A stretch of 64,000 nucleotides of DNA from the NCBI GenBank assembly GCA_036785375.1, contig JAWMAR010000070.1:7068001-7132000 (forward strand). The letters are read 5' to 3'. Source of the stretch: Leucoraja ocellata. Lineage: Eukaryota. The position numbers and the translations under genes are program-made. The stretch's first letter is position 1, and every line of letters starts with the position of its first letter. Under the pieces are notes generated by a model. The model did no database searches, was not told where the DNA came from, and saw only the letters and a list, made by a program, of their open reading frames with translations. Of this stretch, positions 925 through 58,872 are shown in pieces.

Positions 925-1335
925 TGCTTTGACCTGTCGTGGACCAACAACATTGAAGTGGCAGCCAAGGAGGCACACCAATGCATCTACTTCCTCAGAG
1001 ACAGAGGAAATACGACAAGTCTCCAATGTCTCTTAGAAACTTCTACAGATGCACCACAGAGAGCAGACTGTGGGGTTGCATCACAGCTTGGTTTGGGAAC
1101 AGCTCTGAGCCCAAGATCACAAGATATTGCAGAGTTGTGGATGGAGCCCAGTCCATCACACAGACCACACTCCCCACCAGTGACTCCATCTACAACCAAA
1201 AAAATCAAAGACTTGTCCCACCCCGGTCATTCCTCCTTCTCCCTGGTCCTGTCTAGCAGACGGTACAGAAGCTTGAAAGCGCGCACCACCAGACTCAGGA
1301 ACAGCTTCTTCCCCTCTGCTATCAGGCTTCTGAAC
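925..1335 (+). mobile_element. Decayed Rex1/Babar-type LINE RT C-terminal fragment in the A1 intron (also ~58047-58457; a shorter piece lies in the other six introns)
   Basis: Frameshifted peptides AHQCIYFLR, FYRCTTES..CITAWFGN and RRYRSLKARTTRLRNSFFPSAIRLLN match the intact element at 59050-59814. Confidence 0.7.
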
Positions 1336-1372
1336 TGGGGGAACAGTGAACAGAGACAATCCCACCCCCATC

Positions 1373-1750
1373 ACTCACAGACACTTGAAGGATCCACAGG
1401 GTTGGTTACCAGCTCCGGAGTCTCCACACAGGGTGACGGGGTCGGTCTTGTTCTCATCTCCTGCCATCGCTCGCTCCTTTTATACCGACTCCCGGCTTCT
1501 CCTGCCCCTCATTGTCTGCCCTCACGTACATTCAACCAATCACTGCCTCCCACGGAGCATTGGCCGGAGTCAGCCGCGACCTCTCCACCCTCTGCCAAAC
1601 GTGTCGTTGCATCAGCCGTTAACGTTTAACAAGAACAACGTCATCCCAGCTGCCAGCGGCCAACCAGGCGCCCCACACATCCTGCTTGTGTCTCCACCAC
1701 GTCTCGCTTTGGCCACCCATCGGACCAGATGTCCCAGCCACGCCACGTCA
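1373..1750 (-). promoter_or_regulatory. Promoter and first exon of A1 (UPRE, ERSE, CCAAT, TATA, splice donor)
   Basis: TGACGTGG at 1750-1743, CCAAT-N9-CCACG at 1536-1554, TATAAAA at 1484-1478 and donor GTGAGT at 1378-1373. The predicted intron is 793-1378. Confidence 0.7.
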
Positions 1751-19242: not shown

Positions 19243-19755
19243 TCACATCACTGTCAGCTTGGTATTTAGTCTACATTCCTCTTTGCCAGTGAACCAAGCG
19301 CAGGAATACATCCCAACATCACTCTTCTGTAAACCCGTGATGACCAACGAGGCATCCCGTGTCCCATCCACGTTTGTTTCCTTGAACGACCAGCGGCCGG
19401 CCCCCCCTGGATAGGTCGCACCTTTCCCTTTAGTAAACACGGCCAGTGTCCCCTTCCCTTTACTCCAGGTGACAGCAAAGTTGCTGGGTCCATCCTTCCC
19501 TGTGGGTACTATACAGGGTAGCGTAGCAGAACCACCCTTTGCCGTCACATCCGTGAATTTCATCTTGTTCGCAGCTGGCCTAGCACCGCATTCTGGAGTA
19601 TCTTGTTTGTTGACTTGTCGAGGCTCCCGTGCGTTCCACCCGGGCAAGTTTGCTTCCTCTCCCCATTCTCTGGAGATCGGACCTGTTCCAGTTGCGGAGA
19701 CTTGCCACACCATCTCCACAAGGACCATGAATCCTATCCATCTCTGCAGTCCCAT
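19243..19755 (-). CDS. Secreted single V-type Ig-domain precursor, type A copy 2 (A2), 170 aa
   Basis: Leader and propeptide identical to A1. Motifs TLPC, VTW, DASLVI, DVGMYSC and KECRLN, with the stop after LTVM. Confidence 0.85.
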   Translation of the reverse strand: MGLQRWIGFMVLVEMVWQVSATGTGPISREWGEEANLPGWNAREPRQVNKQDTPECGARPAANKMKFTDVTAKGGSATLPCIVPTGKDGPSNFAVTWSKGKGTLAVFTKGKGATYPGGAGRWSFKETNVDGTRDASLVITGLQKSDVGMYSCAWFTGKEECRLNTKLTVM

Positions 19756-19829
19756 GTTCCTGTGGGTGAAACAATGGGTCACCTTATTGCAACTCAGTAG
19801 GATTCATGATGACATTCCCTGAACCCGCC

Positions 19830-20135
19830 CAGAGTTGGGGAATCGAGAACCAGAGGACATCGGTTTAAGGCGAGGGGGGGGGGAAAGATTTAATGGAAAA
19901 CTGAGGGGTGACTTTTTTACACAAAGGGTGGAGGGTGTTTGGAACGAGCTGCCAGAAGAGGTAGTTGAAGCAGGTACTATCACAATGATTAAGAAACAGT
20001 TAGACAGGTACATTGATAGGACAGGATTAGAGGGGTAAGGGCCAAACGCAGGCAGGTGGGTCTAGTATTGATGGGACACGTTGGTGGGCGTGGGCAAGTT
20101 GGGCCGAAGGTCTCGCTGTGACTCTATGACTCCAT
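19830..20135 (+). mobile_element. CR1-type 3' fragment inside the A2 intron; the same insertion is in the introns of B1-B4 and C
   Basis: FFTQRVEGVWNELPEEVVEAGTI..KKQLDRYI motif plus 3' UTR. Confidence 0.7.
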
Positions 20136-20298
20136 CACTTGTCCCACCCCGGTCATTCCTCCTTCTCCCTGGTCCTGTCTAGCAGAAGGTACAGAAGCTT
20201 GAAAGCGCGCACCACCAGACTCAGGAACAGCTTCTTCCCCTCTGCTATCAGGCTTCTGAACTGGGGGAACAGTGAACAGAGACAATCCCACCCCCATC

Positions 20299-20676
20299 AC
20301 TCACAGACACTTGAAGGATCCACAGGGTTGGTTACCAGCTCCGGAGTCTCCACACAGGGTGACGGGGTCGGTCTTGTTCTCATCTCCTGCCATCGCTCGC
20401 TCCTTTTATACCGACTCCCGGCTTCTCCTGCCCCTCATTGTCTGCCCTCACGTACATTCAACCAATCACTGCCTCCCACGGAGCATTGGCCGGAGTCAGC
20501 CGCGACCTCTCCACCCTCTGCCAAACGTGTCGTTGCATCAGCCGTTAACGTTTAACAAGAACAACGTCATCCCAGCTGCCAGCGGCCAACCAGGCGCCCC
20601 ACACATCCTGCTTGTGTCTCCACCACGTCTCGCTTTGGCCACCCATCGGACCAGATGTCCCAGCCACGCCACGTCA
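20299..20676 (-). promoter_or_regulatory. Promoter and first exon of A2
   Basis: UPRE at 20676-20669, ERSE at 20462-20480, TATAAAA at 20410-20404 and donor GTGAGT at 20304-20299. Confidence 0.7.
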
Positions 20677-22492
20677 CCACCACAGCCCTTGGCACCTGCG
20701 CTGGTTCCACAGTTTATACTCAATCTGAGCCGGCAGCTGGGATGGCGTTGGATCAATTCTTCCTTCCCAACAACCATCAGGCTGTTGAACACGACACGAC
20801 ACTGAGGTCAACGATGAACGTCTATGGAATGTCCAAGGTTGCACTAATGCCCCTGTCCCACTTAGGAAACCTGAACGGAAACCTCTGGAGACTTAGCGCC
20901 CCACCCAAGGTTTCCGTGCGGTTCACGGAGGTTTTTGTCTGTCTCCCTACCTGCTTCCACTACCTGCAACCTCCGGCAACCACCTGCAACCTCCGGGAAC
21001 CACCTGCAACCTCCGGGAACCTTCGGGACGAAACGTTGCCTATTTCCTTCACTCCATAGATGCTGCTGCACCCGCTGAGTTTCTCCAGCATTTTTGTGTA
21101 CCTTCGATTTTCCAGTATCTGCAGTTTCTTCTTCAACATCAAATAGAACAAGTTGTCCTACAACTTTAGGCTGTGCACGCCACACGAAAGAAGAAGTTGA
21201 CATGTCTGTCCCGCCATCCCGGGTATTAACCTGGTGAACCTACGTTGCACTCCCTCAATAGCAAGAATGCCCTTCCTCAAAATGACAGTGAAGTGCTGCC
21301 TCTACAGAGACACCCAATAGACCTGATAGAATGGTATAAAATGATGAGAGGCGTAGATAGCTGAGATAACCTGAAGCAATTTCCCGAAGGCTTTGGAGAC
21401 GGTGCAGAAGCAGTTCCCCAGAATGATGTCGGGATCGGAGGTTGTTAGTTATATGGACAGGTTGGATAATCTTGGATTAGTTTCTCTAGAACTTCAGATG
21501 TTGAGCGGAGACCTGACAGAAGGTAATAAAATTCTTAAGGGGTTGGACAGGCTAGATGCAGGAACGTTGTTCCCGATGTTGGGGAAGTCCAGAACTAGGG
21601 GTCACAGTTTAAGGATAAGGGGGAAATCTTTTAGGACCGAGATGAGAAAAACATTTTTCACACAGAGAGTGGTGAATGTGGAATTCTCTGCCACAGAAGG
21701 TATTTGAGGCCAGTTCATTGGCTATATTTAAGAGGGAGTTAGATGTGGCCCTTGTGGCTAAAGGGATCAGGGGGTATGGAGAGAAGGCAGGTACTGGATA
21801 CTGAGTTTGATGATCAGCCATGATCATATTGAATGGCGGTGCAGGCTCGAAGGGCCGAATGGCCTCTACTCCTGCACCTATTGTCTATTGTCTACTGTCT
21901 ATTGTCTATTGAGATAGGAAACATTTAAAGATACAAGTGGAGGTAGTTACAATAGTTCAGAGACTTTATCTAAAAAATCTCATGGTCATGCAGGGAATTG
22001 AGATTATGGATCAGGTGCAGGCAGAGGAGATTAGCTGAACTTGGCATCATGTTCAGCACGGACCATGTGGGCCGAAGGGCCTGTTCCTGTGCTGTTCCAT
22101 GTTCTATGTTACATAGTCTTCTCAATCACATCTTGAGAAGAACATTTTCCAGAGGTGCCCTGGTACCACCAGTGTGACATTCATTGTATCTGCTGCAGTC
22201 AATGAGTGTGTTGTGTAGACAGCCAGAGGAGAAGATGGGATTTATGTGGAGTTTCATTTTGTAATCATTATTTATTTAATGTCATAGTGTAATAGAGTCA
22301 TATAGTGATACAGTGTGGAAACAGGCCCTTCGGCCCAACTTGCCCACACTGGCCAACATGTCCCAGCTACACTAGTCCCACCTGCCTGTGTTTGGTCCAT
22401 ATCCTTCTAAATCTGACCTATACCTGTTCCTGTTTAACTGTTTCTTAAACGTCGGGATAGTTTCTGCCTCAACAGCGATGAGTTGACCAGAA

Positions 22493-22826
22493 CGAGACGT
22501 GGTGGAGACACAAGCAGGATGTGTGGGGCGCCTGGTTGGCCGCTGGCAGCTGGGATGACGTTGTTCTTGTTAAACGTTAACGGCTGATGCAACGACACGT
22601 TTGGCAGAGGGTGGAGAGGTCGCGGCTGACTCCGGCCAATGCTCCGTGGGAGGCAGTGATTGGTTGAATGTACGTGAGGGCAGACAATGAGGGGCAGGAG
22701 AAGCCGGGAGTCGGTATAAAAGGAGCGAGCGATGGCAGGAGATGAGAACAAGACCGACCCCGTCACCCTGTGTGGAGACTCTGGAGCTGGTAACCAACCC
22801 TGTGGATCCTTCAAGTGTCTGTGAGT
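22493..22826 (+). promoter_or_regulatory. Promoter and first exon of B1
   Basis: CCAAT at 22636, CGTGG-N9-ATTGG (reverse ERSE) at 22645-22663, TACGTG at 22671, TATAAAA at 22715-22721 and donor GTGAGT at 22821. The acceptor CAG is at 23361-23363. Confidence 0.7.
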
Positions 22827-23367
22827 GATGGGGGTGGGATTGTCTCTGTTCACTGTTCCCCCAGTTCAGAAGCCTGATAGCAGAGGGGAAGAAGCTGTTC
22901 CTGAGTCTGGTGGTGCGCGCTTTCAAGCTTCTGTACCGTCTGCTAGACAGGACCAGGAAGAAGGAGGAATGACTGGGGTGGGACAAGTGGTGGAGTCATA
23001 GAGTCACAGCGAGACCTTCGGCTCAACTTGCCCGCGCCCACCAACGTGTCCCCATCAATACTAGACCCACCTGCCTGCGTTTGGCCCTAACCCCCCTAAT
23101 CCTGTCCTATCAATGTACCTGTCTAACTGTTTCTTAATCATTGTGACAGTACCTGCCTCAACTACCTCTTCCGGCAGCTCGTTCCAAACACCCTCCACCC
23201 TTTGTGTAAAAAAGTCACCCCTCAGTTTCCCATGAAATCTTTCCCCCCCTCGCCTTAAACCGATGTCCTCTGGTTCTCGATTCCCCAACTCTGGGCGGGT
23301 TCAGGGAATGTCATCATGAATCCTACTGAGTTGCAATAAGGTGACCCATTGTTTCACCCACAGGAAC

Positions 23368-23907
23368 ATGGGACTGCAGAGATGGATAGGATTCATGGTC
23401 CTTGTGGAGATGGTGTGGCAAGTCTCCGTAACTGGAACAGGTCCGATCTCCAGAGAATGGGGAGAGGAAGCAAACTTGGCCGGGCGGAACGCACGGGCGT
23501 ATTTCAAAGTCACCAATAAACCGCTTCCAAGATGCACGAACGAGTCAGATTCTGATGCCATCAGTCATCACCCATCACCGATTAACAAGAAGGTGCTCGT
23601 TGCATCTCTGGGCGGTTCTGTTACGTTGCCATGTAATATATCCATCCTTAAAAATCATTACAGGTTTGTTGAATGGATAAAAGATGGTGTTGAAATTGCC
23701 CATTTCCATGAGAGAGCGTATGCGCATTATACGGGATCTGATGTTCACTGGAAGTTCGTTGATCACGACGTCTATGTGACTCAGGACGCCACGTTGCTCC
23801 TGACAGGTGTAAAAGAGGAAGATAAAGGGACGTATTCCTGTGTTTGGTCCGTGTATAGAGATAGACCGTTTTGTGAATTATTGATGCAGCTGATGATCTC
23901 TCACTGA
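23368..23907 (+). CDS. Secreted single V-type Ig-domain precursor, type B copy 1 (B1), 179 aa; the RxxR site is altered to RAYFK
   Basis: Shared leader, then GGSVTLPC, VEWIKDG, DATLLL, EDKGTYSC and PFCELL. The stop follows ISH and there is no TM segment. Confidence 0.85.
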   Translation: MGLQRWIGFMVLVEMVWQVSVTGTGPISREWGEEANLAGRNARAYFKVTNKPLPRCTNESDSDAISHHPSPINKKVLVASLGGSVTLPCNISILKNHYRFVEWIKDGVEIAHFHERAYAHYTGSDVHWKFVDHDVYVTQDATLLLTGVKEEDKGTYSCVWSVYRDRPFCELLMQLMISH

Positions 23908-24129
23908 TTCAGCAGGGCCAGTCCCAGGGTCAGTAGCAAAGTCTAGTTTAGTTTAGTTTTGTTCAGAGGTACAACAGGGAAACAAGCCCTTCGGCCCACA
24001 GAGTCAATGGGGACCAGTGATCACCCCATATACTAGTTCTATCCCACACACTAGATACAATTTACACTGACCAATTAACCTACAAACCTGCACGTCTCTG
24101 GGGTGTGGGACGAAACCGGAGCACCCGGA

Positions 24130-24610
24130 TTCCAAAGAGGAAGGAAGATTCCAAGGGGAGTTAGGGGCGACCGTGGCTGACAAGGGAAGTCAGGGACACT
24201 ATCACAATAAAAGAGAACAGGTATAACGTTGCAAAGATGAGCGGAAAGCCAGGGGATTGGGTAACTCTTTTAAAGAGCAACAGAAGATAACTAAAAAAGC
24301 AATACGGGGAGAAATGATGAGGTATGAAGGTAAGATAGCCAAGAATAGTAAGGAGGATCGTAAAAGCTTCTTTAGATATGTGAAAAAAATTAGTTCAGAC
24401 TAAAATTGGACCTTTATAGACTAAAAACTTTGGATCCGTCTTCACTAAGGAGAACACAAACAATCTCCCTGATGTATTAGTGGTCAGAGGATCTGGGGAC
24501 AACGGAGAGCCAGTGGATGTAGTGTACCTGGACTTGCAGGAAGTATTTGATAAGGTCCCACATAGGAGATTAGTGGGCAAAATTAGAGCACATGGTATTG
24601 GGGGAAGGGC
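24130..24610 (+). mobile_element. Internally deleted CR1 ORF2 fragments in the predicted 3' UTR of B genes (also ~31265-31745, 37770-38315, 44320-44865)
   Basis: PWLTREV.., FGSVFTKE and [17 protein letters not shown] motifs. Confidence 0.7.
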
Positions 24611-26111: not shown

Positions 26112-27907
26112 GTCCCTTGCAGTCAGAAGCAAGTGAATTGATCATGGGGAACAAGGACATGGCAGACCAATTGAATAACTACTTTGGTTCTGTCTTCACT
26201 AAGGAAGACATAAATAATCTGCCGGAAATAGCAGGGGACCGCGGGTCAAATGAGATGGAGGAACTGAGTGAAATCCAGGTTAGCCGGGAAGTGGTGGTAG
26301 GTAAATTGAATGAATTAAAAGCCGATAAATCCCCAGGGCCAGATAGGTTGCATCCCAGAGTACTTAAGGAAGTAGCCCCAGAAATAGTGGATGCATTAGT
26401 GATAATTTTTCAAAACTCTTTAGATTTGGAAGTAGTTCCTGAGGATTGGAGGGTAGCTAATGTAACACCACATTTTAAAAAGAGAGGGAGAGAGAAAATG
26501 GGGAATTACAGACCAGTTAGTCTAACGTCGGTAGTGGGGAAACTGCTAGAATCAGTTATTAAAGATGGGATAGTAGCACATTTGGAAAGTGGTGAAATCA
26601 TTGGACAAGGTCAGCATGGATTTATGAAGGGTAAATCATGTCTGACGAATCTTATAGAATTTTTCGAGGATGTAACTAGTAGAGTGGATAAGGGAGAACC
26701 AGTGGATGTGTTGTATCTGGACTTCCAGAAGGCTTTCAACAAGGTCCCACATAAGAGATTAGTATACAAACTTAAAGCACACGGTATTGGGGGTTCAGTA
26801 CTGATGTGGATAGAGAACTGGCTGGCAGACAGAAAGCAAAGAGTAGGAGTAAACGGGTCCTTTTCAGAATGGCAGGCAGTGACTAGTGGGGTACCGCAAG
26901 GCTCAGTTCTGGGACCCCAGCTATTTACGGTATATATTAATGATTTGGACGAGGGAATTGAATGCAACATCTCCAAGTTTGCGGATGACACAAAGCTGGG
27001 GGCAGTGTTAGCTGTGAGGAGGATGCTAGGAGGCTGCAAGGTGACTTGGATAGGCTGGGTTGGTGGGCAAATGCATGGCAGATGCAGTATAATGTGGATA
27101 AATGTGAGGTTATCCACTTTGGTGGCAAAAACAGGAAATTAGACTATTATCTGAATGGTGGCCGATTAGGAAAGGGGGAGATGCAACGAGACCTGGGTGT
27201 CATGGTACACCAGTCATTAAAAGTAGGCATGCAGGTGCAGCAGGCAGTGAAGAAGGCGAATGGTATTTTAGCATTCATAGCAAAAGGATTTGAGTATAGG
27301 AGAAGGGAGGTTCTACTGCAGTTGTACATGCTCTTGGTGAGACCACACCTGGAGTATTGCGTACAGTTTGGTCTCTTAATCTGAGGAAAGACATTCTTGC
27401 CATAGAGGGAGTACAGAGAAGGCTCACCAGACTGATTCCTGGGATGTCAGGACTTTCATATGACGAAAGACTGGATAGACTCGGTTTGTACTCGCTAGAA
27501 TTTAGAAGATTGAGGGGGGATCTTATAGAAACTTACAAAATTCTTAAGGGGTTGGACAGGCTAGATGCAGGAAAATTGGTCCCGATGTTGGGGAAGTCCA
27601 GAACAAGGGGTCACAGTTTAAGGATAAGGGGGAAATCTTTTGGGGCCGAGATGAGGAAAACTTTTTTCACACAGCGTGGTGAATCTCTGGAATTCTCTGC
27701 CGCAGAAGGTAGTTGAAGCCAGTTCATTGGCTATATTTAAGAGGGAGTTAGATGTGGCCCTTGTGGCTAAATGGATCAGGTGGTATGGAGAGAACGCAGG
27801 TACAGGATACTGAGTTGGATGATCTGCCATGATCATATTGAATGGCAGTGCAGGCTCGAAGGGCCGAATGGCCTACTCCTGCACCTGTACCTATATATGT
27901 TTCTATG
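26112..27907 (+). mobile_element. 5'-truncated CR1 LINE, 1.8 kb, RT domain frameshifted
   Basis: [37 protein letters not shown] and FADD motifs plus 3' UTR. It is flanked by a TTCAG direct repeat, and the empty site is visible at ~33390 and ~39934. Confidence 0.9.
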
Positions 27908-28577
27908 TTCAGCCTCGTGCAAGCAGAAACACTCCAAAAGGTCACGCTGTCCCAAGGATTCTTCCAGAAGATCGACAAAGGACCTCGTGGGGGCTGCCTT
28001 TTATAAGTCCCCGAACCTTGAGGGGCCGAACTACATAGGGGTGGTCTCTTTACAATCCAATCAAACATATTAATTACATCAGTATATTATAGACAGTTCC
28101 CCAGACCACTAACAGTCTCCCACACATTGTTTCAGGAGAAGCTTCTGGAAGATGCTAACTTAACTTGAATAATGCAACATTTACCCTGGAATTCAAACAA
28201 ACCTGCCAGGGCTCAACACTTTAGCCAATCAACAAACAGTAGGATAACTGCCTGGCACATTATGTACAATATTTACAATGCTGTTACAGTAATCTAATCA
28301 ACCATGCATTTACACTTCATTGGAGGTCATCTCCATGCATGGAAATCGGTATCAAAACATGGGGGGGGCACAATTCCATGGCGGCACACATGCACACGCG
28401 TGCATGCGGCACACACGCGAGGATTCAGCCATGGGCCCTGTGGACGGTAACATCGGGAACTGACTTGGTTGGTGACCGACTCCGAACTCCAGCAACAGCA
28501 GCTTCGTCCGCCCGGAATCGTGGGGCTTGAATCGGCCCGTTCGCGGGGCCTTTCATCGCCCGGCGGGGGTTTCAACA

Positions 28578-29342
28578 TTGGTATTGATGTGGATAGAGAA
28601 CTGGCTGGCAGACAGAAAGCAAAGAGTAGGAGTAAACGGGTCCTTTTCAGAATGGCAGACAGTGACTAGTGGGGTACTGCAAGGCTCAGTGCTGGGACCC
28701 CAGCTATTTACAATATATATTAATGATTTGAATGAGGGAGTTGAATGCAACATCTCCAAGTTTGCGGATGACACGAAACTGGGGGGCAGTGTTAGCTGTG
28801 AGGAGGACGCTAGGAGGCCGCAAGGTGACTTGGATAGGTTGGGTTAGTGGGAAAATGAATGGAAGATGCAGTATAATGTGGATAGATGTGAGGTTATCCA
28901 TTTTGGTGGCAAAAACAGGAAAGTAGATTATTATCTGAATGGTGGCCGATTAGGAAAAGGGGAGATGCAACGAGACCTGGGTGTCATGGTACACCGGTCA
29001 TTAAAAGTGGGCATGCAGGTGCAGCAGGCAGTGAAGAAAGAGAATGGTATGTTAGCTTTCATTGCAAAAGGATTTGAGTATAAGAGCAGGGAGGTTCTAC
29101 TGCAGTTGTACAAGGTCTTGGTGAGACCACACCTGGAGTATTGCGTACAGTTTTGGTCTCATAATCTGAGGAAAGACATTCTTGCCATAGAGAGAGTACA
29201 GAGAAAGTTCACCAGACTGATTCCTGGGATGGCAGGACTTTATGGCATACTGAGTTGGATGATCAGTATAATCATATTAAATGGCAGTGCAGGCTCGAAG
29301 GGCCGAATGGCCTACTCCTGCACCTATTTTCCATGTTTCTAT
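28578..29342 (+). mobile_element. Internally deleted CR1 RT fragment (also 34038-34822, 40582-41366 and a further-deleted 48948-49166)
   Basis: [17 protein letters not shown] and YCVQFWS motifs joined directly to the 3' UTR. Confidence 0.85.
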
Positions 29343-29630
29343 GGGAGCCTCGATCGCCTCGATGCAGCAGTTTGATTTTAAGCCGCTTGGGCGCTGAAAG
29401 GCCCCGCGAACGGGACGATTCTGCCCATAGAAAGCGTCTGATAAAGTCCGGAACACAAAACATGGGCGGGGGGGGAATCGTCCCCCACCTCCCAAAGCAT
29501 AGGGGGACATGCCCCCTGTCCCCCCCCCCCAGGATTCCTGCCCATGGCGGTCACGATGTCTCCTTCACCGCCGCAGTCTCGACGCCTCTATGATGGCCGC
29601 GAAAAACTCAGATCTCTGGGTTGACCAGAA

Positions 29631-29964
29631 CGAGACGTGGTGGAGACACAAGCAGGATGTGTGGGGCGCCTGGTTGGCCGCTGGCAGCTGGGATGACGTT
29701 GTTCTTGTTAAACGTTAACGGCTGATGCAACGACACGTTTGGCAGAGGGTGGAGAGGTCGCGGCTGACTCCGGCCAATGCTCCGTGGGAGGCAGTGATTG
29801 GTTGAATGTACGTGAGGGCAGACAATGAGGGGCAGGAGAAGCCGGGAGTCGGTATAAAAGGAGCGAGCGATGGCAGGAGATGAGAACAAGACCGACCCCG
29901 TCACCCTGTGTGGAGACTCCGGAGCTGGTAACCAACCCTGTGGATCCTTCAAGTGTCTGTGAGT
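29631..29964 (+). promoter_or_regulatory. Promoter and first exon of B2
   Basis: ERSE at 29783-29801, TATAAAA at 29853-29859 and donor at 29959. Confidence 0.7.
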
Positions 29965-30506
29965 GATGGGGGTGGGATTGTCTCTGTTCACTGTTCCCCC
30001 AGTTCAGAAGCCTGATAGCAGAGGGGAAGAAGCTGTTCCTGAGTCTGGTGGTGCGCGCTTTCAAGCTTCTGTACCTTCTGCTAGACAGGACCAGGGAGAA
30101 GGAGGAATGACAGGGGTGGGACAAGTGATGGAGTCATAGAGTCACAGCGAGACCTTCGGCCCAACTTGCCCGCGCCCACCAACGTGTCCCCATCAATACT
30201 AGACCCACCTGCCTGCGTTTGGCCCTTACCCCTCTAATCCTGTCCTATCAATGTACCTGTCTAACTGTTTCTTAATCATTGTGATAGTACCTGCCTCAAC
30301 TACCTCTTCCGGCAGCTCGTTCCAAACACCCTCCACCCTTTGTGTAAAAAAAGTCACCCCTCAGTTTCCCATGAAATCTTTCCCCCCCTCACCTTAAACC
30401 GATGTCCTCTGGTTCTCGATTCCCCAACTCTGGGCGGGTTCAGGGAATGTCATCATGAATCCTACTGAGTTGCAATAAGGTGACCCATTGTTTCACCCAC
30501 AGGAAC

Positions 30507-35753: not shown

Positions 35754-36136
35754 TTATCATTATTTATTTAATGTTTCACGTTTACACCAATCTCTCCACC
35801 ACCACGAACAAGCAGCACAAGACGCGACAAGACAGACACCATTGTATGCAGATGCCGAGAAGTGTGATCAGCTCTGGCTGAACAACTAATCTTGTGTGTG
35901 GATTCGATAAGCAGAAGATTTAATGTCATAGTGTTATACAGTCATAGAGTGATACAGCATGGAAACAGGCCCTTTGGCCCAACGTGCCCACATTGGACAA
36001 CATGTCCCAGCTACACTAGTCCCACCTGTCCACGTTTGGTCCATATCCCTCCAAATCTGACCTATCCCTGTTCCTGTCTAGCTGTTTCTTAAACGTCGGG
36101 ATAGTTTCTGCCTCAACTGCGATGGGTTGACCAGAA

Positions 36137-36470
36137 CGAGACGTGGTGGAGACACAAGCAGGATGTGTGGGGCGCCTGGTTGGCCGCTGGCAGCTGGGAT
36201 GACGTTGTTCTTGTTAAACGTTAACGGCTGATGCAACGACACATTTGGCAGAGGGTGGAGAGGTCGCGGCTGACTCCGGCCAATGCTCCGTGGGAGGCAG
36301 TGATTGGTTGAATGTACGTGAGGGCAGACAATGAGGGGCAGGAGAAGCCGGGAGTCGGTATAAAAGGAGCGAGCGATGGCAGGAGATGAGAACAAGACCG
36401 ACCCCGTCACCCTGTGTGGAGACTCCGGAGCTGGTAACCAACCCTGTGGATCCTTCAAGTGCCTGTGAGT
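36137..36470 (+). promoter_or_regulatory. Promoter and first exon of B3
   Basis: ERSE at 36289-36307, TATAAAA at 36359-36365 and donor at 36465. Confidence 0.7.
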
Positions 36471-37013
36471 GATGGGGGTGGGATTGTCTCTGTTCACTGT
36501 TCCCCCAGTTCAGAAGCCTGATAGCAGAGGGGAAGAAGCTGTTCCTGAGTCTGGTGGTGCGCGCTTTCAAGCTTCTGTATCTTCTGCTAGACAGGACCAG
36601 GGAGAAGGAGGAATGACCGGGGTGGGACAAGTGATGGAGTCATAGAGTCACAGCGAGACCTTCGGCCCAACTTGCCCGCGCCCACCAACGTGTCCCCATC
36701 AATACTAGACCCACCTGCCTGCGTTTGGCCCTTACCCCTCTAATCCTGTCCTATCAATGTACCTGTCTAACTGTTTCTTAATCATTGTGATAGTACCTGC
36801 CTCAACTACCTCTTCCGGCAGCTCGTTCCAAACACCCTCCACCCTTTGTGTAAAAAAGTCACCCCTCAGTTTTCCATGAAATCTTTCCCCCCCCCTCGCC
36901 TTAAACCGATGTCCTCTGGTTCTCGATTCCCCAACTCTGGGCGGGTTCAGGGAATGTCATCATGAATCCTACTGAGTTGCAATAAGGTGACCCATTGTTT
37001 CACCCACAGGAAC

Positions 37014-40900: not shown

Positions 40901-42680
40901 GTGGATAAATGTGAGGTTATCCATTTTGGTGTAAAAAACAGGAAAGTAGATTATTATCTGAATGGTGGCCGATTAGGAAAAGGGGAGATGCAACGAGACC
41001 TGGGTGTCATGGTACACCAGTCATTAAAAGTGGGCATGCAGGTGCAGCAGGCAGTGAAGAAAGAGAATGGTATGTTAGCATTCATAGCAAAAGGATTTGA
41101 GTATAAGAGCAGGGAGGTTCTACTGCAGTTGTACAGGGTCTTGGTGAGACCACACCTGGAGTATTGCGTACAGTTTTGGTCTCCTAATCTGAGGAAGGAC
41201 ATTCTTGCCATAGAGGGAGTACAGAGAAGGTTCACCAGACTGATTCCTGGGATGTCAGGACTTTATGGCATACTGAGTTGGATGATCAGTATAATCATAT
41301 TAAATGGCAGTGCAGGCTCGAAGGGCCGAATGGCCTACTCCTGCACCTATTTTCTACGTTTCTATGGGAGCCTCGATCGCCTCGATGCAGCAGTTTGATT
41401 TTAAGCCGCTCGGGCGCTGAAAGGCCCCGCGAACGGGACGATTCTGCCCATAGAAAGCGTCTGATAAAGTCCGGAACACAAAACATGGGCGGGGGGGGGA
41501 ATCGTCCCCACCTCCCAAAGCACTGGGGACGTGCCCCCTGTCCCCCCCCCCAGGATTTCTGCCCATGGCGGTGACGATATCTCCTTCACCGCCGCAGTCT
41601 CGACGCCTCTTTGATGGCCGCGAAAAACCCCATGTGGGGCGTAGAAGGCCGGGTCGGATAAAGCGGAAAGTTAATTTCAATGAGGTCCTCCCCCTGACAT
41701 CACTGGAAGCTGCTGGTCGACCACTCCCCCTTTGTGACATCACTCGAAGCGGGGTGAAGGTTTGCCGTTTAATAAGTTGGTTTTCACTATTTTTAAAACG
41801 CTATAACTTGTGAACTACAGCATGTAATGTGAAGTGGAGCAGTTTATTTTGTCAAAGGGGTTAATGTGATTAATAATGTGCGGAGGAGGGGAGGAGGAGA
41901 GGGGAGAGAAGGAGGAGGGTGTAGACGAGGGGGAGGGAGTGTAAGAGACTCGCCTGCGCAGTTGTGGGGTATGGGTGAGTGGTGGAATATTACGTTGGGG
42001 GGACGGGTACATCGCAAAGGAATCTCATTTAGATTTCTTGGGAGGAGGCTTTTCATTGTGGGGGGTGGAATTGCTGAGAGGTTTCATTTACTCCTTATTT
42101 ATAAAATAATTACGATTGTGGGGAGGGGTGGGTTGGGGGCGGGGGCTCCCCGTTTCATTGTGGGGGGGTGGAGTAAGAGAGAGGTTTCATTTCCAGAATT
42201 TTCCTTGCTAGGGGATGGGGTGAGTATTGTGGGGTATGGGTGAGTGGTGGAATATTACGTTGGGGGAACGGGGCCCAACGGGTCCCACTTGGTCTAGTTA
42301 TCATTATTTATTTAATGTTTCACGTTTACACCAATCTCTCCACCACCACGAACAAGCAGCACAAGACGCAACAAGACAGACACCATTTTATGCAGATGCC
42401 GAGAAGTGTGATCAGCTCTGGCTGAACAACTAATCTTGTGTGTGGATTCGATAAGCAGAAGATTTAATGTCATAGTGTTATACAGTCATAGAGTGATACA
42501 GCATGGAAACAGGCCCTTTGGCCCAACTTGCCCACATTGGACAACATGTCCCAGCTACACTAGTCCCACCTGTCCACGTTTGGTCCATATCCCTCCAAAT
42601 CTGACCTATCCCTGTTCCTGTCTAGCAGTTTCTTAAACGTCGGGATAGTTTCTGCCTCAACTGCGATGGGTTGACCAGAA

Positions 42681-43014
42681 CGAGACGTGGTGGAGACACA
42701 AGCAGGATGTGTGGGGCGCCTGGTTGGCCGCTGGCAGCTGGGATGACGTTGTTCTTGTTAAACGTTAACGGCTGATGCAACGACACGTTTGGCAGAGGGT
42801 GGAGAGGTCGCGGCTGACTCCGGCCAATGCTCCGTGGGAGGCAGTGATTGGTTGAATGTACGTGAGGGCAGACAATGAGGGGCAGGAGAAGCCGGGAGTC
42901 GGTATAAAAGGAGCGAGCGATGGCAGGAGATGAGAACAAGACCGACCCCGTCACCCTGTGTGGAGACTCCGGAGCTGGTAACCAACCCTGTGGATCCTTC
43001 AAGTGTCTGTGAGT
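42681..43014 (+). promoter_or_regulatory. Promoter and first exon of B4
   Basis: ERSE at 42833-42851, TATAAAA at 42903-42909 and donor at 43009. Confidence 0.7.
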
Positions 43015-43558
43015 GATGGGGGTGGGATTGTCTCTGTTCACTGTTCCCCCAGTTCAGAAGCCTGATAGCAGAGGGGAAGAAGCTGTTCCTGAGTCTGGTG
43101 GTGCGCGCTTTCAAGCTTCTGTACCTTCTGCTAGAGAGGACCAGGGAGAAGGAGGAATGACCGGGGTGGGACAAGTGATGGAGTCATAGAGTCACAGCGA
43201 GACCTTCGGCCCAACTTGCCCGCGCCCACCAACGTGTCCCCATCAATACTAGACCCACCTGCCTGCGTTTGGCCCTTACCCCTCTAATCCTGTCCTATCA
43301 ATGTACCTGTCTAACTGTTTCTTAATCATTGTGATAGTACCTGCCTCAACTACCTCTTCCGGCAGCTCGTTCCAAACACCCTCCACCCTTTGTGTAAAAA
43401 AGTCACCCCTCAGTTTCCCATGAAATCTTTCCCCCCCCCCTCGCCTTAAACCGATGTCCTCTGGTTCTCGATTCCCCAACTCTGGGCGGGTTCAGGGAAT
43501 GTCATCATGAATCCTACTGAGTTGCAATAAGGTGACCCATTGTTTCACCCACAGGAAC

Positions 43559-48279: not shown

Positions 48280-50490
48280 TTCAGCCTCGTGCAAGCAGAA
48301 ACACTCCAAAAGGTCACGCTGTCCCAAGGATTCTTCCAGAAGATCGACAAAGGACCTCGTGGGGGCTGCCTTTTATAAGTCCCCGAACCTTGAGGGGCCG
48401 AACTACATAGGGGTGGTCTCTTTACAATCCAATCAAACATATTAATTACATCAGTATATTATAGACAGTTCCCCAGACCACTAATAGATCCCATACATTG
48501 TTTCAGGAGAAGCTTCTGGAAGATGCTAACTTAACTTGAATAATGCAACATTTACCCTGGAATTCAAACAAACCCTGCCAGGGCTCAACACTTTAGCCAA
48601 TCAACAAACAGTAGGATAACTGCCTGGCACATTATATACAATATTTACAATGCTGTTACAGTAATCCAATCAACCATGCATTTACACTTCATTGGAGGTC
48701 ATCTCCTTGCACGGAAATCGGCATCAAAACATAGGGGGCCACAATTCCATGGCAGCACACATGCACACGCATGCATGCGGCACACACGCGAGGATTCGGC
48801 CATGGGCCCTGTGGACAGTAACATCGGGAGCTGACTTGGTTGGTGACCGACTCCGAACTCCAGCAACAGCAGCTTCGTCCGCCCCGAACCGTGGGGCTTG
48901 AATCGGCCCGTTCGCGGGGCCTTTCATCGCCCGGCAGGGGTTTCAACATTGGCATTGATGTGGATAGAGAACTGGCTGGTCTCTTAATCTGAGGAAAGAC
49001 ATTATTGCCATAGAGAGAGTACAGAGAAAGTTCACCAGACTGATTCCTGGGATGTCAGGACTTTATGGCATACTGAGTTGGATGATCAGTATAATCATAT
49101 TAAATGGCAGTGCAGGCTCGAAGGGCCGAATGGCCTACTCCTGCACCTATTTTCTATGTTTCTATGGGAGCCTCGATCGCCTCGATCGCCTCGATGCAGC
49201 AGTTTGATTATAAGCCGCTTGGGCGCTGAAAGGCCCCGCGAACGGGACGATTCTGCCCATAGAAAGCGTCTGATAAAGTCCGGAACACAAAACATGGGCG
49301 GGGGGGGAATCGTCCCCCACCTCCCAAAGCATAGGGAGACGTGCCCCCTGTTCCCCCCCCCAGGATTTCCGCCCATGGCGGTCACGATGTCTCCTTCACC
49401 GCTGCAGTCTCGACGCCTCTTTGATGGCCGCGAAAAACCCCATGTGGGGCGTAGAAGGCCGGGTCGGATAAAGCGGAAAGTTAATTTCAATGAGGTCCTC
49501 CCCCTGACATCACTGGAAGCTGCTGGTCGACCACTCCCCCTTTGTGACATCACTCGAAGCGGGGTGAAGGTTTGCCGTTTAATAAGTTGGTTTTCACTAT
49601 TTTTAAAACGCTATAACTTGTGAACTACAGCATGTAATGTGAAGTGGAGGAGTTTATTTTGTCAAAGGGGTTAATGTGATTAATAATGTGCGGAGGAGGG
49701 GAGGAGGAGAGGGGAGAGAAGGAGGAGGGTAAAGACGAGGGGGAGGGAGTGTAAGAGACTCGCCTGCGCAGTTGTGGGGTATGGGTGAGTGGTGGAATAT
49801 TACGTTGGGGGGACGGGTACATCGCAAAGGAATCTCATTTAGATTTCTTGGGAGGGGGCTTTTCATTGTGGGGGGTGGAATTGCTGAGAGGTTTCATTTA
49901 CTCCTTATTTACAAAATAATTACGATTGTGGGGAGGGGTGGGTTGGAGGCGGGGGCTCCCCGTTTCATTGTGGGGGGGTGGAGTAAGAGAGAGGTTTCAT
50001 TTCCAGAATTTTCCTTGTGGGAGGATGGGGTGAGTATTGTGGGGTATGGGTGAGTGGTGGAATATTACGTTGGGGGAACGGGGCCCAACGGGTCCCACTT
50101 GGTCTAGTTATCATTATTTATTTAATGTTTCACGTTTACACCAATCTCTCCACCACCACGAACAAGCAGCACAAGACGCGACAAGACAGACACCATTTTA
50201 TGCAGATGCCGAGAAGTGTGATCAGCTCTGGCTGAACAACTAATCTTGTGTGTGGATTCGATAAGCAGAAGATTTAATGTCATAGTGTTATACAGTTATA
50301 GAGTGATACAGCATGGAAACAGGCCCTTCGGCCCAACTTGCCCACATTGGACAACATGTCCCAGCTACACTAGTCCCACCTGTCCACGTTTGGTCCATAT
50401 CCCTCCAAATCTGACCTATACCTGTTCCTGTCTAGCTGTTTCTTAAACGTCGGGATAGTTTCTGCCTCAACTGCGATGGGTTGACCAGAA

Positions 50491-50824
50491 CGAGACGTGG
50501 TGGAGACACAAGCAGGATGTGTGGGGCGCCTGGTTGGCCGCTGGCAGCTGGGATGACGTTGTTCTTGTTAAACGTTAACGGCTGATGCAACGACACGTTT
50601 GGCAGAGGGTGGAGAGGTCGCGGCTGACTCCGGCCAATGCTCCGTGGGAGGCAGTGATTGGTTGAATGTACGTGAGGGCAGACAATGAGGGGCAGGAGAA
50701 GCCGGGAGTCGGTATAAAAGGAGCGAGCGATGGCAGGAGATGAGAACAAGACCGACCCCGTCACCCTGTGTGGAGACTCCGGAGCTGGTAACCAACCCTG
50801 TGGATCCTTCAAGTGTCTGTGAGT
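50491..50824 (+). promoter_or_regulatory. Promoter and first exon of type C copy
   Basis: ERSE at 50643-50661, TATAAAA at 50713-50719 and donor at 50819. Confidence 0.7.
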
Positions 50825-51379
50825 GATGGGGGTGGGATTGTCTCTGTTCACTGTTCCCCCAGTTCAGAAGCCTGATAGCAGAGGGGAAGAAGCTGTTCCT
50901 GAGTCTGGTGGTGCGCGCTTTCAAGCTTCTGTACCTTCTGCTAGACAGGACCAGGGAGAAGGAGGAATGACCGGGGTGGGACAAGTGATGGAGTCATAGA
51001 GTCACAGCGAGACCTTTGGCCCAACTTGCCCGCGCCCACCAACGTGTCCCCATCAATACTAGACCCACCTGCCTGCGTTTGGCCCTTACCCCTCTAATCC
51101 TGTCCTATCAATGTACCTGTCTAACTGTTTCTTAATCATTGTGATAGTACCTGCCTCAACTACCTCTTCCGGCAGCTCGTTCCAAACACCCTCCACCCTT
51201 TGTGTAAAAAAGTCACCCCTCAGTTTCCCATTAAATCTTCCCCCCCCCCCCCCCCCCCCCCTCGCCTTAAACCGATGTCCTCTGGTTCTCGATTCCCCAA
51301 CTCTGGGCGGGTTCAGGGAATGTCATCATGAATCCTACTGAGTTGCAATAAGGTGACCCATTGTTTCACCCACAGGAAC

Positions 51380-57910: not shown

Positions 57911-58494
57911 GTTCCTGTGGGTGAAACAATGGGTCACCTTATTGCAACTCAGTAGGATTCATGATGACATTCCCTGAAGCTGCTGCCACCACACTGGGCA
58001 ATGTCACTGTGCAGCTTCTACAGCTCCCGCCTGGTTTAGTTTAAGTTGCTTTGACCTGTCGTGGACCAACAACATTGAAGTGGCAGCCAAGGAGGCACAC
58101 CAATGCATCGACTTCCTCAGAGACAGAGGAAATACGACAAGTCTCCAATGTCTCTTAGAAACTTCTACAGATGCACCACAGAGAGCAGACTGTGGGGTTG
58201 CATCACAGCTTGGTTTGGGAACAGCTCTGAGCCCAAGACCACAAGATATTGCAGAGTTGTGGATGGAGCCCAGTCCATCACACAGACCACACTCCCCACC
58301 AGTGACTCCATCTACAACCAAAAAAATCAAAGTCTTGTCCCACCCCGGGCATTCCTCCTTCTCCCTGGTCCTGTCTAGCAGAAGGTACAGAAGCTTGAAA
58401 GCGCGCACCACCAGACTCAGGAACAGCTTCTTCCCCTCTGCTATCAGGCTTCTGAACTGGGGGAACAGTGAACAGAGACAATCCCACCCCCATC

Positions 58495-58872
58495 ACTCAC
58501 AGACACTTGAAGGATCCACAGGGTTGGTTACCAGCTCCGGAGTCTCCACACAGGGTGACGGGGTCGGTCTTGTTCTCATCTCCTGCCATCGCTCGCTCCT
58601 TTTATACCGACTCCCGGCTTCTCCTGCCCCTCATTGTCTGCCCTCACGTACATTCAACCAATCACTGCCTCCCACGGAGCATTGGCCGGAGTCAGCCGCG
58701 ACCTCTCCACTCTCTGCCAAACGTGTCGTTGCATCAGCCGTTAACGTTTAACAAGAACAACGTCATCCCAGCTGCCAGCGGCCAACCAGGCGCCCCACAC
58801 ATCCTGCTTGTGTCTCCACCACGTCTCGCTTTGGCCACCCATCGGACCAGATGTCCCAGCCACGCCACGTCA
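58495..58872 (-). promoter_or_regulatory. Promoter and first exon of A3
   Basis: UPRE at 58872-58865, ERSE at 58658-58676, TATAAAA at 58606-58600 and donor at 58500-58495. Confidence 0.7.

What the first reader, a model, noticed from the sequence alone, without database searches (positions are those of the whole stretch)
22493..22826. Every Ig gene has a promoter with a perfect ER-stress response element, like an ER chaperone gene
Seen: all 8 copies carry CCAAT-N9-CCACG, read as CGTGG-gaggcagtg-ATTGG in gene sense (1536, 20462, 22645, 29783, 36289, 42833, 50643, 58658). It lies ~50-70 bp upstream of TATAAAA, with a second CCAAT and several ACGT cores nearby. Known: CCAAT-N9-CCACG is the ERSE bound by NF-Y with ATF6 or XBP1s in promoters such as HSPA5, HSP90B1 and CALR. 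Inference: a diversifying secreted Ig family is wired to the unfolded-protein response. It may be induced by ER stress or infection, or driven in professional secretory cells. The promoter may have been captured from a UPR target gene.
Basis: partly seen in the sequence, partly recalled or inferred. Interest (0 to 1): 0.85.

Follow-up and report, generated by a model that had tools for sequence, protein, structure and literature searches.

The report
ERSE-like motif in skate IgV promoters
Eight skate genes for small secreted antibody-like (V-type Ig) proteins share one almost identical promoter that carries a perfect match to the DNA motif used by ER-stress genes, but the eight copies count as a single evolutionary event and nothing yet shows that the motif works.

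Summary
CCAAT-N9-CCACG occurs 8 times against 0.12 expected. Each copy lies 52 nt upstream of TATAAAA and 723-766 nt upstream of the leader ATG of one of the window's 8 V-set Ig genes.

The eight copies are not independent. They sit in a 5' cassette of promoter, exon 1 and intron parts that is 99.8% identical between two subfamilies. The mature V domains of those subfamilies are only 55% identical in DNA. The promoter is no better conserved than the adjoining intron. The evidence is therefore one motif, copied.

Contig depths indicate a family-linked block, not a dispersed repeat.

Gene models of a related skate place exon 1 inside the block. Their ATG starts 17 nt after the TATA start, so the transcription start is unresolved.

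Two RNA runs gave zero reads on the gene.

Other bZIP-type motifs lie in the same 231 bp: two 7/8 UPRE-like sites, a C/EBP-ATF core and five ACGT cores.

Verdict: a real promoter cassette with a plausible but untested ERSE. I put UPR wiring at about 0.35. Other notes of this scan place arrays of the same family beyond the window.

The parts
22484..22863 (+). Family-specific 5' segment of gene B1: proximal promoter, exon 1 and the first 42 nt of intron 1.
   Evidence: It is near-invariant in all 8 copies. Summed contig depth in X1 is 1.1-3.2 thousand, close to the leader exon's 0.8-1.7 thousand, while flanking repeats reach 1e5-1.6e7. The 231 bp upstream of the TATA box have GC 59% and CpG o/e 0.90, against 0.50 for the window.
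22645..22663 (-). Perfect ERSE-I match CCAAT-N9-CCACG, reading CGTGG-N9-ATTGG in gene sense.
   Evidence: Its CCAAT half matches 9 of 9 positions of a recalled extended NF-Y consensus.
22636..22640 (+). Second CCAAT box, 4 nt upstream of the CGTGG half. The arrangement is CCAAT-N4-CGTGG-N9-ATTGG.
   Evidence: 8 of 9 to the recalled NF-Y consensus.
22495..22502 (+). UPRE-like site matching 7 of 8 positions of TGACGTGG. It holds the second CCACG (minus strand, 22498-22502) and an ACGT core.
22556..22563 (+). CRE/UPRE-like site TGACGTTG (7 of 8 to the UPRE consensus, with the TGACG half-site).
22585..22592 (-). C/EBP-ATF composite (CARE/AARE) core TTGCATCA.
   Evidence: The 10-mer around it matches 8 of 10 positions of the CHOP site quoted in bioRxiv 10.1101/2022.10.10.511668. 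This core arises in 270 of 20000 shuffles.
22715..22721 (+). TATAAAA box.
   Evidence: Present at the same offset in 8 of 8 copies.
22732..22821 (+). Exon 1 as used in the NCBI models of the related skate (30 codons, MAGDENK...KCL). Its real 5' end is unknown. If the TATA box directs the start, it is 5' UTR from about 22745.
   Evidence: translation. The donor CT|GTGAGT is kept in 8 of 8 copies. No ATG lies between 22745 and 22821.
22864..22957 (.). Old fragment of a high-copy repeat inside intron 1, shared by all 8 copies.
   Evidence: Depth jumps to 2.7-5.3e5 in X1, and loose ends lie before 22864 in all four runs. 3 of 94 columns vary among the copies.
23364..23907 (+). Exon 2 of B1. The acceptor is ...cacag|, the leader ATG is at 23368, and signal peptide, pro-region and V-set Ig domain follow up to the stop.
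   Evidence: (Pfam V-set, E 4.2e-08).
1211..1715 (-). Same block in gene A1: ERSE 1536-1554, TATA 1478-1484, leader ATG 788.
20137..20641 (-). Same block in gene A2: ERSE 20462-20480, TATA 20404-20410, leader ATG 19755. It lies head to head with B1.
29622..30126 (+). Same block in gene B2: ERSE 29783-29801, TATA 29853-29859, leader ATG 30507.
36128..36632 (+). Same block in gene B3: ERSE 36289-36307, TATA 36359-36365, leader ATG 37014.
42672..43176 (+). Same block in gene B4: ERSE 42833-42851, TATA 42903-42909, leader ATG 43559.
50482..50986 (+). Same block in gene B5: ERSE 50643-50661, TATA 50713-50719, leader ATG 51380. The ORF stops after 149 aa.
58333..58837 (-). Same block in gene A3: ERSE 58658-58676, TATA 58600-58606, leader ATG 57910.

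Best explanation
The segment is the shared proximal promoter and first exon of a ray- and skate-specific family of secreted single-V-domain IgSF genes. One ancestral promoter was copied with the genes. It is kept almost identical as part of a homogenised 5' cassette (promoter, exon 1, family-specific intron parts, leader and pro-region), most likely by gene conversion, while the mature V domain diverges. This promoter has two CCAAT boxes, a TATA box and a cluster of ACGT/CCACG bZIP-type sites. One CCAAT-CCACG pair has exact ERSE-I geometry.

Shown here: the motif, its position, its 1:1 linkage to the genes, the homogenisation, and that it is not a dispersed repeat.

Inferred:
- NF-Y binds the CCAAT boxes and a TATA-directed start lies near 22745, which makes exon 1 a 5' UTR.
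- A bZIP factor occupies the CCACG/ACGT sites.
- I put the chance that this factor belongs to the ATF6/XBP1s/CREB3 group, so that the family responds to ER stress or a secretory-cell programme, at about 0.35. It is somewhat more likely that the CCACG half is incidental or serves another factor.
For: - 8 of 8 Ig exons pair with 8 of 8 blocks.
- TATAAAA lies at a fixed +70 in 8 of 8 copies.
- Six of the 7 related proteins begin with the peptide encoded at 22732-22821, joined to the leader exon.
- GT donor and AG acceptor are intact in 8 of 8 copies.
- A-versus-B identity is 99.8% in the promoter, 99.6% in exon 1, 100% in the family-specific intron ends and 97.7% in leader plus pro-region, but 55% in the mature V part.
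- Variable columns number 2 of 239 in the promoter and 7 of 231 in the conserved intron parts (Fisher p = 0.10), so conservation is tract-wide.
- In X1, block depth (1.1-3.2 thousand) is close to leader-exon depth (0.8-1.7 thousand) and about 10 times that of the B1-specific V exon (0.1-0.33 thousand). Neighbouring repeats reach 1e5-1.6e7.
- The ERSE's CCAAT matches 9 of 9 positions of a recalled NF-Y consensus.
- The octamer of antibody V promoters is absent.
Against: - No transcript evidence. Two RNA runs (7.3 and 17.6 million records read, about 6% and 1% of the runs) gave zero depth on the block and on exon 2.
- The NCBI models may be partly ab initio. Their ATG (22732) starts 17 nt after the first T of the TATA box, which does not fit a TATA-directed start.
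- The Rhinoraja model starts at the leader Met, and the Narcine relative has an unrelated N-terminal extension.
- Summed contig depths are only a rough proxy for copy number, as the header itself says.
- Gene conversion is inferred from the identity pattern and was not demonstrated.
Confidence: 0.7

Rival explanations
1. The ERSE is functional: NF-Y on CCAAT recruits ATF6(N), or XBP1s or a CREB3-family factor binds CCACG. The whole family is then induced by ER stress or infection, or is driven in professional secretory cells.
For: - The 10 specified bases and the spacing match perfectly. The chance is 15 in 20000 shuffles of the promoter, or 0.8% given two CCAAT and two CCACG placed at random.
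- The element sits proximally, 52-70 nt upstream of the TATA box.
- ERSEs act in both orientations (PMC3672785, passage read).
- The same 231 bp hold further stress-type bZIP motifs: two 7/8 UPRE-like sites, a CARE core identical to the 8-nt core of the CHOP site, and five ACGT cores. Five or more ACGT cores arise in 16 of 20000 shuffles.
- CHOP combines an ERSE with a C/EBP-ATF site (bioRxiv 10.1101/2022.10.10.511668, passages read).
- ER-stress bZIPs can drive secreted defence proteins: CREBH drives SAP and CRP (PMC6125421, passage read).
Against: - The effective sample is one promoter.
- A scan of the human genome listed 535 perfect ERSE-I matches, of which few are validated (PMC5890977, passages read).
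- There is only one ERSE per promoter, whereas chaperone genes use several (same paper).
- Two RNA samples gave zero reads, unlike the broad basal activity I would expect, from recall, of NF-Y/ERSE chaperone promoters.
- The accessory motifs were found by a post hoc scan of about 20 recalled consensus strings.
- Raising secreted cargo under ER stress is not the usual UPR logic (general knowledge).
Confidence: 0.35
2. An ordinary NF-Y/TATA promoter. The CCAAT boxes and TATA box are functional, and the CCACG nine bases away is incidental or bound by an unrelated ACGT/CGTG factor (CREB/ATF, a bHLH factor, HIF-type). Tissue specificity comes from elsewhere.
For: - CCAAT plus TATA is a generic architecture.
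- The promoter is CpG-rich (o/e 0.90), so CGTG-type strings are frequent: three RCGTG matches.
- No conservation signal separates the motif from neutral intron sequence.
- The gene was silent in two RNA samples.
Against: Exact ERSE geometry has about a 0.8% positional chance even when the half-sites are given. ACGT cores are enriched beyond dinucleotide expectation, with five or more in 16 of 20000 shuffles.
Confidence: 0.45
3. The block is not the promoter in use. Transcription starts elsewhere, for example further upstream as the NCBI ATG at 22732 would require, or just upstream of the leader exon. The TATA and ERSE are then relics.
For: The model ATG lies too close to the TATA box. The Rhinoraja model lacks the exon-1 peptide. 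There are no RNA reads.
Against: Six of the 7 related proteins use exon 1. The splice sites are intact in 8 of 8 copies. The sequence just upstream of the leader exon is a polypyrimidine/AG acceptor preceded by repeat-derived DNA.
Confidence: 0.15
4. The block is a promoter captured from a UPR target gene, or derives from a mobile element such as a solo LTR.
For: The family-specific segment begins with TG (22484) and ends with CA (22863). CCAAT plus TATA is common in LTR U3 regions (recalled). The 5' homology boundary is sharp in all copies.
Against: Block depth equals leader-exon depth, with no excess copies. No polyadenylation signal or terminal inverted repeat is visible in 22745-22863 (read). 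No comparison with a chaperone gene promoter was possible.
Confidence: 0.05

Closest known systems
ERSE-I promoters of ER chaperone genes (HSPA5, HSP90B1, CALR)
   Same: The CCAAT-N9-CCACG consensus is exact, in a proximal promoter with CCAAT boxes. The definition is taken from passages read in PMC8301375 and PMC6125421.
   Different: There is one ERSE per promoter rather than several (PMC5890977). The gene encodes secreted cargo, not folding machinery. No expression was seen in two RNA samples. Inducibility is untested.
[quoted passage not shown]
   Same: A perfect ERSE and the 8-nt TTGCATCA core of the composite site occur together.
   Different: CHOP is described as TATA-less in a passage read in PMC1475745, whereas a TATAAAA is present here. 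The composite site matches only 8 of 10 positions. The function of either site is untested.
PRNP promoter ERSEs (PMC3672785)
   Same: A non-chaperone gene with an ERSE in the opposite orientation close to the start site.
   Different: The PRNP elements are imperfect and were tested experimentally, giving 1.7- to 2.6-fold induction. The element here is perfect but untested.
CREBH/ATF6-driven acute-phase genes (SAP, CRP)
   Same: Secreted defence-type proteins placed under an ER-stress-activated bZIP factor (PMC6125421, passage read). This is the nearest precedent for the physiological idea.
   Different: Those are single-copy liver genes. Whether they use an ERSE-I is not stated in what I read. 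The gene here belongs to a multigene V-domain family of unknown tissue.
Gene families with an invariant prepro/5' region and a hypervariable mature part (conotoxins, amphibian skin peptides; recalled, not checked here)
   Same: The 5' cassette is constant and the mature domain divergent: 97.7-99.8% against 55% nt identity.
   Different: Here the invariance includes the promoter and intron, which points to conversion or recombination rather than selection on the motif.

Membership tests
ERSE-I (NF-Y + ATF6/XBP1s element) | Sequence CCAAT-N9-CCACG with exact 9-nt spacing | tested here: met
   One search finds 8 of 8 copies perfect. Shuffles of one promoter give 15 of 20000.
ERSE-I (NF-Y + ATF6/XBP1s element) | Lies in the proximal promoter of the regulated gene | tested here: inconclusive
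   The element ends 52 nt upstream of TATAAAA, and exon 1 of the related NCBI models starts 69 nt downstream of it. No RNA read places the TSS.
ERSE-I (NF-Y + ATF6/XBP1s element) | The CCAAT half is bound by NF-Y | not testable with these tools
   Only a sequence match is available: 9 of 9 positions of a recalled extended consensus.
ERSE-I (NF-Y + ATF6/XBP1s element) | The CCACG half is bound by ATF6(N) or XBP1s, and transcription is induced by ER stress | not testable with these tools
   No stressed-tissue RNA was available. Two unrelated RNA runs show zero depth.
ERSE-I (NF-Y + ATF6/XBP1s element) | Kept in promoters of diverged relatives (phylogenetic footprint) | tested here: inconclusive
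   Paralogues within the window are homogenised. A 504-nt contig of organism B differs at 6 letters only, which is too close to be informative.
Chaperone-type UPR promoter | Multiple ERSE copies per promoter | tested here: not met
   There is one perfect ERSE per block. The second CCACG (22498) has no CCAAT at N9.
ERSE-II (ATTGG-N-CCACG) | Exact consensus | tested here: not met
   No match in 22484-22826 on either strand.
UPRE (TGACGTGG/A) | Exact consensus | tested here: not met
   No exact match. Two sites match 7 of 8 positions, at 22495 and 22556.
C/EBP-ATF composite site (CARE/AARE) | Match to the CHOP site as quoted in the preprint | tested here: inconclusive
   The 8-nt core matches 8 of 8 at 22585-22592, and the 10-mer 8 of 10. 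The core arises in 270 of 20000 shuffles.
Antibody V-gene promoter | Octamer ATGCAAAT upstream of the TATA box | tested here: not met
   No octamer on either strand in 22484-22826.
MHC-type X-Y module (recalled) | An RFX X box upstream of a CRE-like X2 box and an inverted CCAAT Y box | tested here: not met
   No RFX palindrome with 0-3 nt spacer and up to 1 mismatch, and no RGYAAC half-site, in 22484-22720. The consensus was recalled.
Interspersed repeat / TE-derived block | Many copies unlinked to the genes | tested here: not met
   Summed depth of the block is 1.1-3.2 thousand, against 1e5-1.6e7 for the flanking repeats, and is close to the leader exon's depth. This is a rough measure.

The most novel reading that the evidence does not exclude
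A batoid-specific multigene family of secreted, propeptide-bearing single-V-domain proteins is transcriptionally coupled to ER-stress and integrated-stress bZIP factors through a compact promoter that holds an ERSE, UPRE-like sites and a C/EBP-ATF core. That would make it an inducible humoral effector repertoire, an Ig-domain analogue of acute-phase proteins. The whole array would be switched on together because gene conversion keeps every promoter identical.
Probability: 0.3. Interest if true: 0.65.

Novelty: new member of a known kind. Interest (0 to 1): 0.35.

Why it matters
If the element works, dozens of diversified secreted V-domain genes in skates and rays would share one stress-responsive switch. 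That would be an unusual link between the unfolded-protein response and a germline-encoded recognition repertoire in the oldest jawed vertebrates. It would also be easy to test, because a 230-bp promoter fits directly into a reporter.

If it does not work, the case is a caution: a motif repeated in every member of a homogenised gene array is one observation, not eight.

Either way, the invariant 5' cassette joined to hypervariable V exons is the more robust and probably the more interesting feature of this locus.

Tried and rejected
- **RNA evidence.** One read-laying run on 22250-24000 with two raw-read RNA runs (X23 and X24) and two contig runs (X1 and X5). The RNA runs covered only repeat-derived parts, so no TSS, splice or expression evidence came out. 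The contig runs behave as DNA: one contig runs unspliced across the exon 1 donor. I used them only for rough relative depth.
- **Cross-species promoter comparison.** A metagenome scan with the family alignment found no relative.
- **Conservation as evidence for the motif.** Rejected, because the promoter (2 of 239 variable columns) does not differ from the conserved intron parts (7 of 231, p = 0.10). Taking only the 5' intron part (7 of 167) gives p = 0.036, but adding the invariant 3' intron end removes the signal.
- **CpG richness as a promoter signature.** The promoter has o/e 0.90, but exon 2 has 0.86, so it is not specific.
- **Small RNA gene in the block.** There are no Rfam matches in 22000-24300 at E up to 1.
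- **MHC-like X-Y module.** No RFX box is present.
- **LTR origin.** Only the TG...CA ends speak for it, and depth argues against it.
- **Family identity.** The profile search gave 1530 hits at E up to 0.001. Among the 150 listed, only P0001 and P0042 cover leader plus V; the others match Ig domains of large multi-domain proteins.
- **Papers.** No paper holds the leader peptide or the LOC identifiers (full-text search of the held library only). A search for skate secreted V-set families listed nothing relevant in the 12 rows shown, of 196 papers.
- **Supplements.** I did not request them. S1 Table and S2-S4 Figs of PMC5890977 may bear on base rates and orientation.
- **Joined product.** I did not build or search a joined exon 1-exon 2 product. 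The junction is seen only in the stored NCBI proteins.

Full report
**1. The observation**

A search for CCAAT-N9-CCACG finds eight perfect matches. They lie at 1536, 20462 and 58658 on the + strand and at 22645, 29783, 36289, 42833 and 50643 on the - strand. All eight carry the same 19-mer. The expectation is 0.12, and none of 100 shuffles reaches eight.

In gene sense every copy reads CGTGG-N9-ATTGG. TATAAAA starts 70 nt after the first base of the element in 8 of 8 copies.

One search confirms a second CCAAT at 22636 and five ACGT cores at 22497, 22558, 22574, 22597 and 22672.

**2. The genes**

tblastn with one A-type and one B-type product finds exactly eight Ig exons in the window, each downstream of one block. 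The leader ATGs are:

| Gene | Leader ATG | Strand |
|---|---|---|
| A1 | 788 | - |
| A2 | 19755 | - |
| B1 | 23368 | + |
| B2 | 30507 | + |
| B3 | 37014 | + |
| B4 | 43559 | + |
| B5 | 51380 | + |
| A3 | 57910 | - |

- The B1 product (179 aa) has a signal-like leader, a pro-region and one V-set domain (Pfam PF07686, E 4.2e-08).
- The best database relatives are uncharacterised proteins of Leucoraja erinacea (at most 92% identity) and Rhinoraja longicauda. The window therefore comes from a skate whose own products are not in that collection.
- A profile search adds one distant member with the same layout, XP_069798310.1, named 'nectin-1-like', from the electric ray Narcine bancroftii. The family thus spans skates and electric rays.
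- These are stand-alone IgSF V genes, not antibody genes. No octamer is present in the block.
- Other first-stage notes of this scan place more arrays of the family 60-375 kb beyond the window. These are leads I did not check.

**3. Anatomy of the block**

- Six of the seven related proteins begin with a 30-residue peptide that is encoded, letter for letter, at 22732-22821.
- It joins the leader exon through a CT|GTGAGT donor at 22821/22822 and a ...cacag| acceptor at 23363/23364. Both sites are intact in 8 of 8 copies. Exon 1 therefore lies inside the block.
- The family-specific segment runs from 22484 to 22863.
- From 22864 to 22957 the intron carries an old fragment of a high-copy repeat, shared by all eight copies. 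After that, A and B copies differ by later repeat insertions until homology resumes at 23300.

**4. Where transcription starts is open**

The model ATG (22732) begins 17 nt after the first T of the TATA box. A TATA-directed start is usually 25-35 nt downstream (established knowledge), which would be about 22740-22750 and would exclude that ATG. The leader Met (23368, context AACATGG) would then be the start codon.

Three facts fit that reading:
- the signal-like segment would then be N-terminal;
- the Rhinoraja model starts at the leader Met;
- the N-terminal extension of the Narcine relative is unrelated.

The two variable sites in exon 1 are both synonymous in the model frame (read), but two sites prove nothing.

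I favour a TATA-directed start with a non-coding exon 1, at about 0.65. This is inference.

**5. Eight copies are one observation**

| Segment | Mean A-vs-B nt identity | Variable columns among 8 copies |
|---|---|---|
| Promoter | 99.8% | 2 of 239 |
| Exon 1 | 99.6% | 2 of 90 |
| Family-specific 5' end of intron | 100% | 0 of 42 |
| 3' end of intron | 100% | 0 of 64 |
| Repeat fragment in intron | 99.1% | 3 of 94 |
| Leader plus pro-region | 97.7% | 8 of 134 |
| Mature V part | 55% | 221 of 356 |

(All figures.)

The conserved intron parts together show 7 of 231 variable columns, against 2 of 239 in the promoter (Fisher p = 0.10). A neutral intron that is as invariant as the promoter means the tract is homogenised, most likely by gene conversion or recombination of a 5' cassette. 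It is not held by selection on the motif. The recurrence in 'every gene' therefore adds nothing to the case for function.

**6. Is a single ERSE there by chance?**

- In 20000 dinucleotide-preserving shuffles of the 231-bp promoter, a perfect ERSE appears 15 times.
- Given two CCAAT and two CCACG placed at random, exact geometry arises in 0.8% of trials.
- Against this stands the size of the search. This scan reads very many windows, and a published scan lists 535 perfect ERSE-I matches in the human genome, with few validated (PMC5890977, passages read).
- From general knowledge, I estimate that roughly a third of perfect, promoter-proximal ERSEs are real UPR elements.

**7. Other motifs in the promoter**

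The same 231 bp hold:
- two sites matching 7 of 8 positions of the UPRE TGACGTGG (22495 and 22556);
- five ACGT cores.

In the 20000 shuffles the composite core arises 270 times, and five or more ACGT cores arise 16 times. The ERSE's CCAAT fits a recalled extended NF-Y consensus at 9 of 9 positions.

This looks like a promoter rich in bZIP sites and recalls CHOP, which combines an ERSE with a C/EBP-ATF site (same preprint, passages read). I found these motifs with a post hoc list of about 20 recalled consensus strings, so they give modest support only.

No exact UPRE, ERSE-II, NF-kB, ISRE, STAT, octamer or RFX box is present.

**8. Reads**

The one read-laying run used two raw-read RNA runs: X23, poly-A, from organism E, and X24, single-cell, from organism B. 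With 7.3 and 17.6 million records read (about 6% and 1% of the runs), depth was zero in every bin of 22486-22839 and 23312-23901. Repeat-derived bins reached 455 and 972.

The family was therefore silent in those samples, whose tissues I do not know. That argues against a chaperone-like, broadly active promoter. It does not argue against an inducible or tissue-restricted one.

The two contig runs behave as DNA, since a contig crosses the exon 1 donor unspliced.
- In X1 the summed depth is 1.1-3.2 thousand on the block and 0.8-1.7 thousand on the leader exon.
- It is 0.1-0.33 thousand on the B1-specific V part and 1e5-1.6e7 on the flanking repeats.
- In X5 one 504-nt contig (22390-22893) differs from the window at 6 letters.

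Summed contig depth is a poor copy-number measure, as the tool itself says. Even so, the block tracks the leader exon and lies two to four orders of magnitude below the repeats.

X1 also holds a diverged variant of 22629-22744, with 9 differences in 116 nt. I could not see its letters.

**9. Comparison with what is known**

- Definitions. ERSE-I is CCAAT-N9-CCACG, and ATF6(N) binds CCACG only when NF-Y holds CCAAT. XBP1s also binds. ERSE-II is ATTGG-N-CCACG and the UPRE is TGACGTGG/A (PMC8301375, passages read).
- ERSEs tolerate substitutions and act in both orientations (PMC3672785, passage read). The reversed orientation here is therefore no objection.
- NF-Y sits constitutively on ER-stress promoters (PMC1475745, passages read).
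- Chaperone genes use several ERSEs (PMC5890977). This promoter has one.
- The nearest precedent for secreted defence proteins under an ER-stress bZIP factor is CREBH driving SAP and CRP (PMC6125421, passage read).

**10. Verdict**

The sequence observation is confirmed. The block is very probably the family's promoter and first exon, and it is family-linked. The ERSE match is perfect and well placed, but it is one event, with no transcript, conservation or functional evidence behind it.

I rate UPR-type wiring at about 0.35 and an ordinary NF-Y/TATA promoter with an incidental or otherwise-used CCACG at about 0.45. A start site elsewhere gets about 0.15, and capture or TE origin about 0.05.

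The firmer result is the homogenised 5' cassette joined to hypervariable V exons. The decisive tests are TSS mapping, the Rhinoraja and Narcine promoters, and a 340-bp reporter with point mutants.

**11. What I could not do**

No tool searches this genome for further copies. I did not request supplements of the cited papers.

Noticed in passing
window 23364-23907 and the seven paralogous exons: The identity between subfamilies A and B switches sharply at about 23497. It is 97.7% nt over leader plus pro-region and 55% over the mature V part, while family-specific intron parts are 100% identical. This is a constant 5' cassette on hypervariable V exons.
   Followed up: partly
window 51380-51850 (gene B5): The ORF stops after 149 aa, and tblastn shows a second, shifted piece. 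It is probably a pseudogene, yet it keeps a perfect promoter block.
   Followed up: no
window 23499-23521 (gene B1): B1 has a private patch of clustered changes that replaces the ..APRQV.. motif kept by the other seven copies. The organism B contig differs from the window exactly there.
   Followed up: no
P0042 (XP_069798310.1, Narcine bancroftii, 'nectin-1-like'): This is a distant family member with the same leader, PRQV motif and four-cysteine layout but an unrelated 28-aa N-terminal extension. It extends the family to electric rays.
   Followed up: partly
window 22629-22744, run X1: Organism A holds a diverged variant of the ERSE-to-TATA stretch, with 9 differences in 116 nt and depth 59, against about 900-1100 for the exact block. 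Its letters were not shown.
   Followed up: no
alignment A1: Four cysteines are invariant in 12 of 12 family members: C56, C89, C158 and C169 in B1 numbering. That suggests a second disulfide tying the pre-V linker to the C-terminal strand.
   Followed up: no
window 26117-27142 (+), also 28527-29375: LINE reverse-transcriptase ORFs (Pfam RVT_1, E 3.2e-27) fill much of each repeat unit between the genes. The SINE-like stretch at 22309-22367 has a summed depth of 1.6e7 in X1.
   Followed up: no
window 19243-23907: A2 and B1 lie head to head, with their ERSEs 2.2 kb apart (20462 and 22645) and repeat-derived DNA between them.
   Followed up: no
window 276 and downstream on the - strand (gene A1): No AATAAA or ATTAAA lies within 900 nt after the stop of A1. 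In the other copies the first signal is 301-806 nt after the stop. The 3' ends of these genes are undefined.
   Followed up: no
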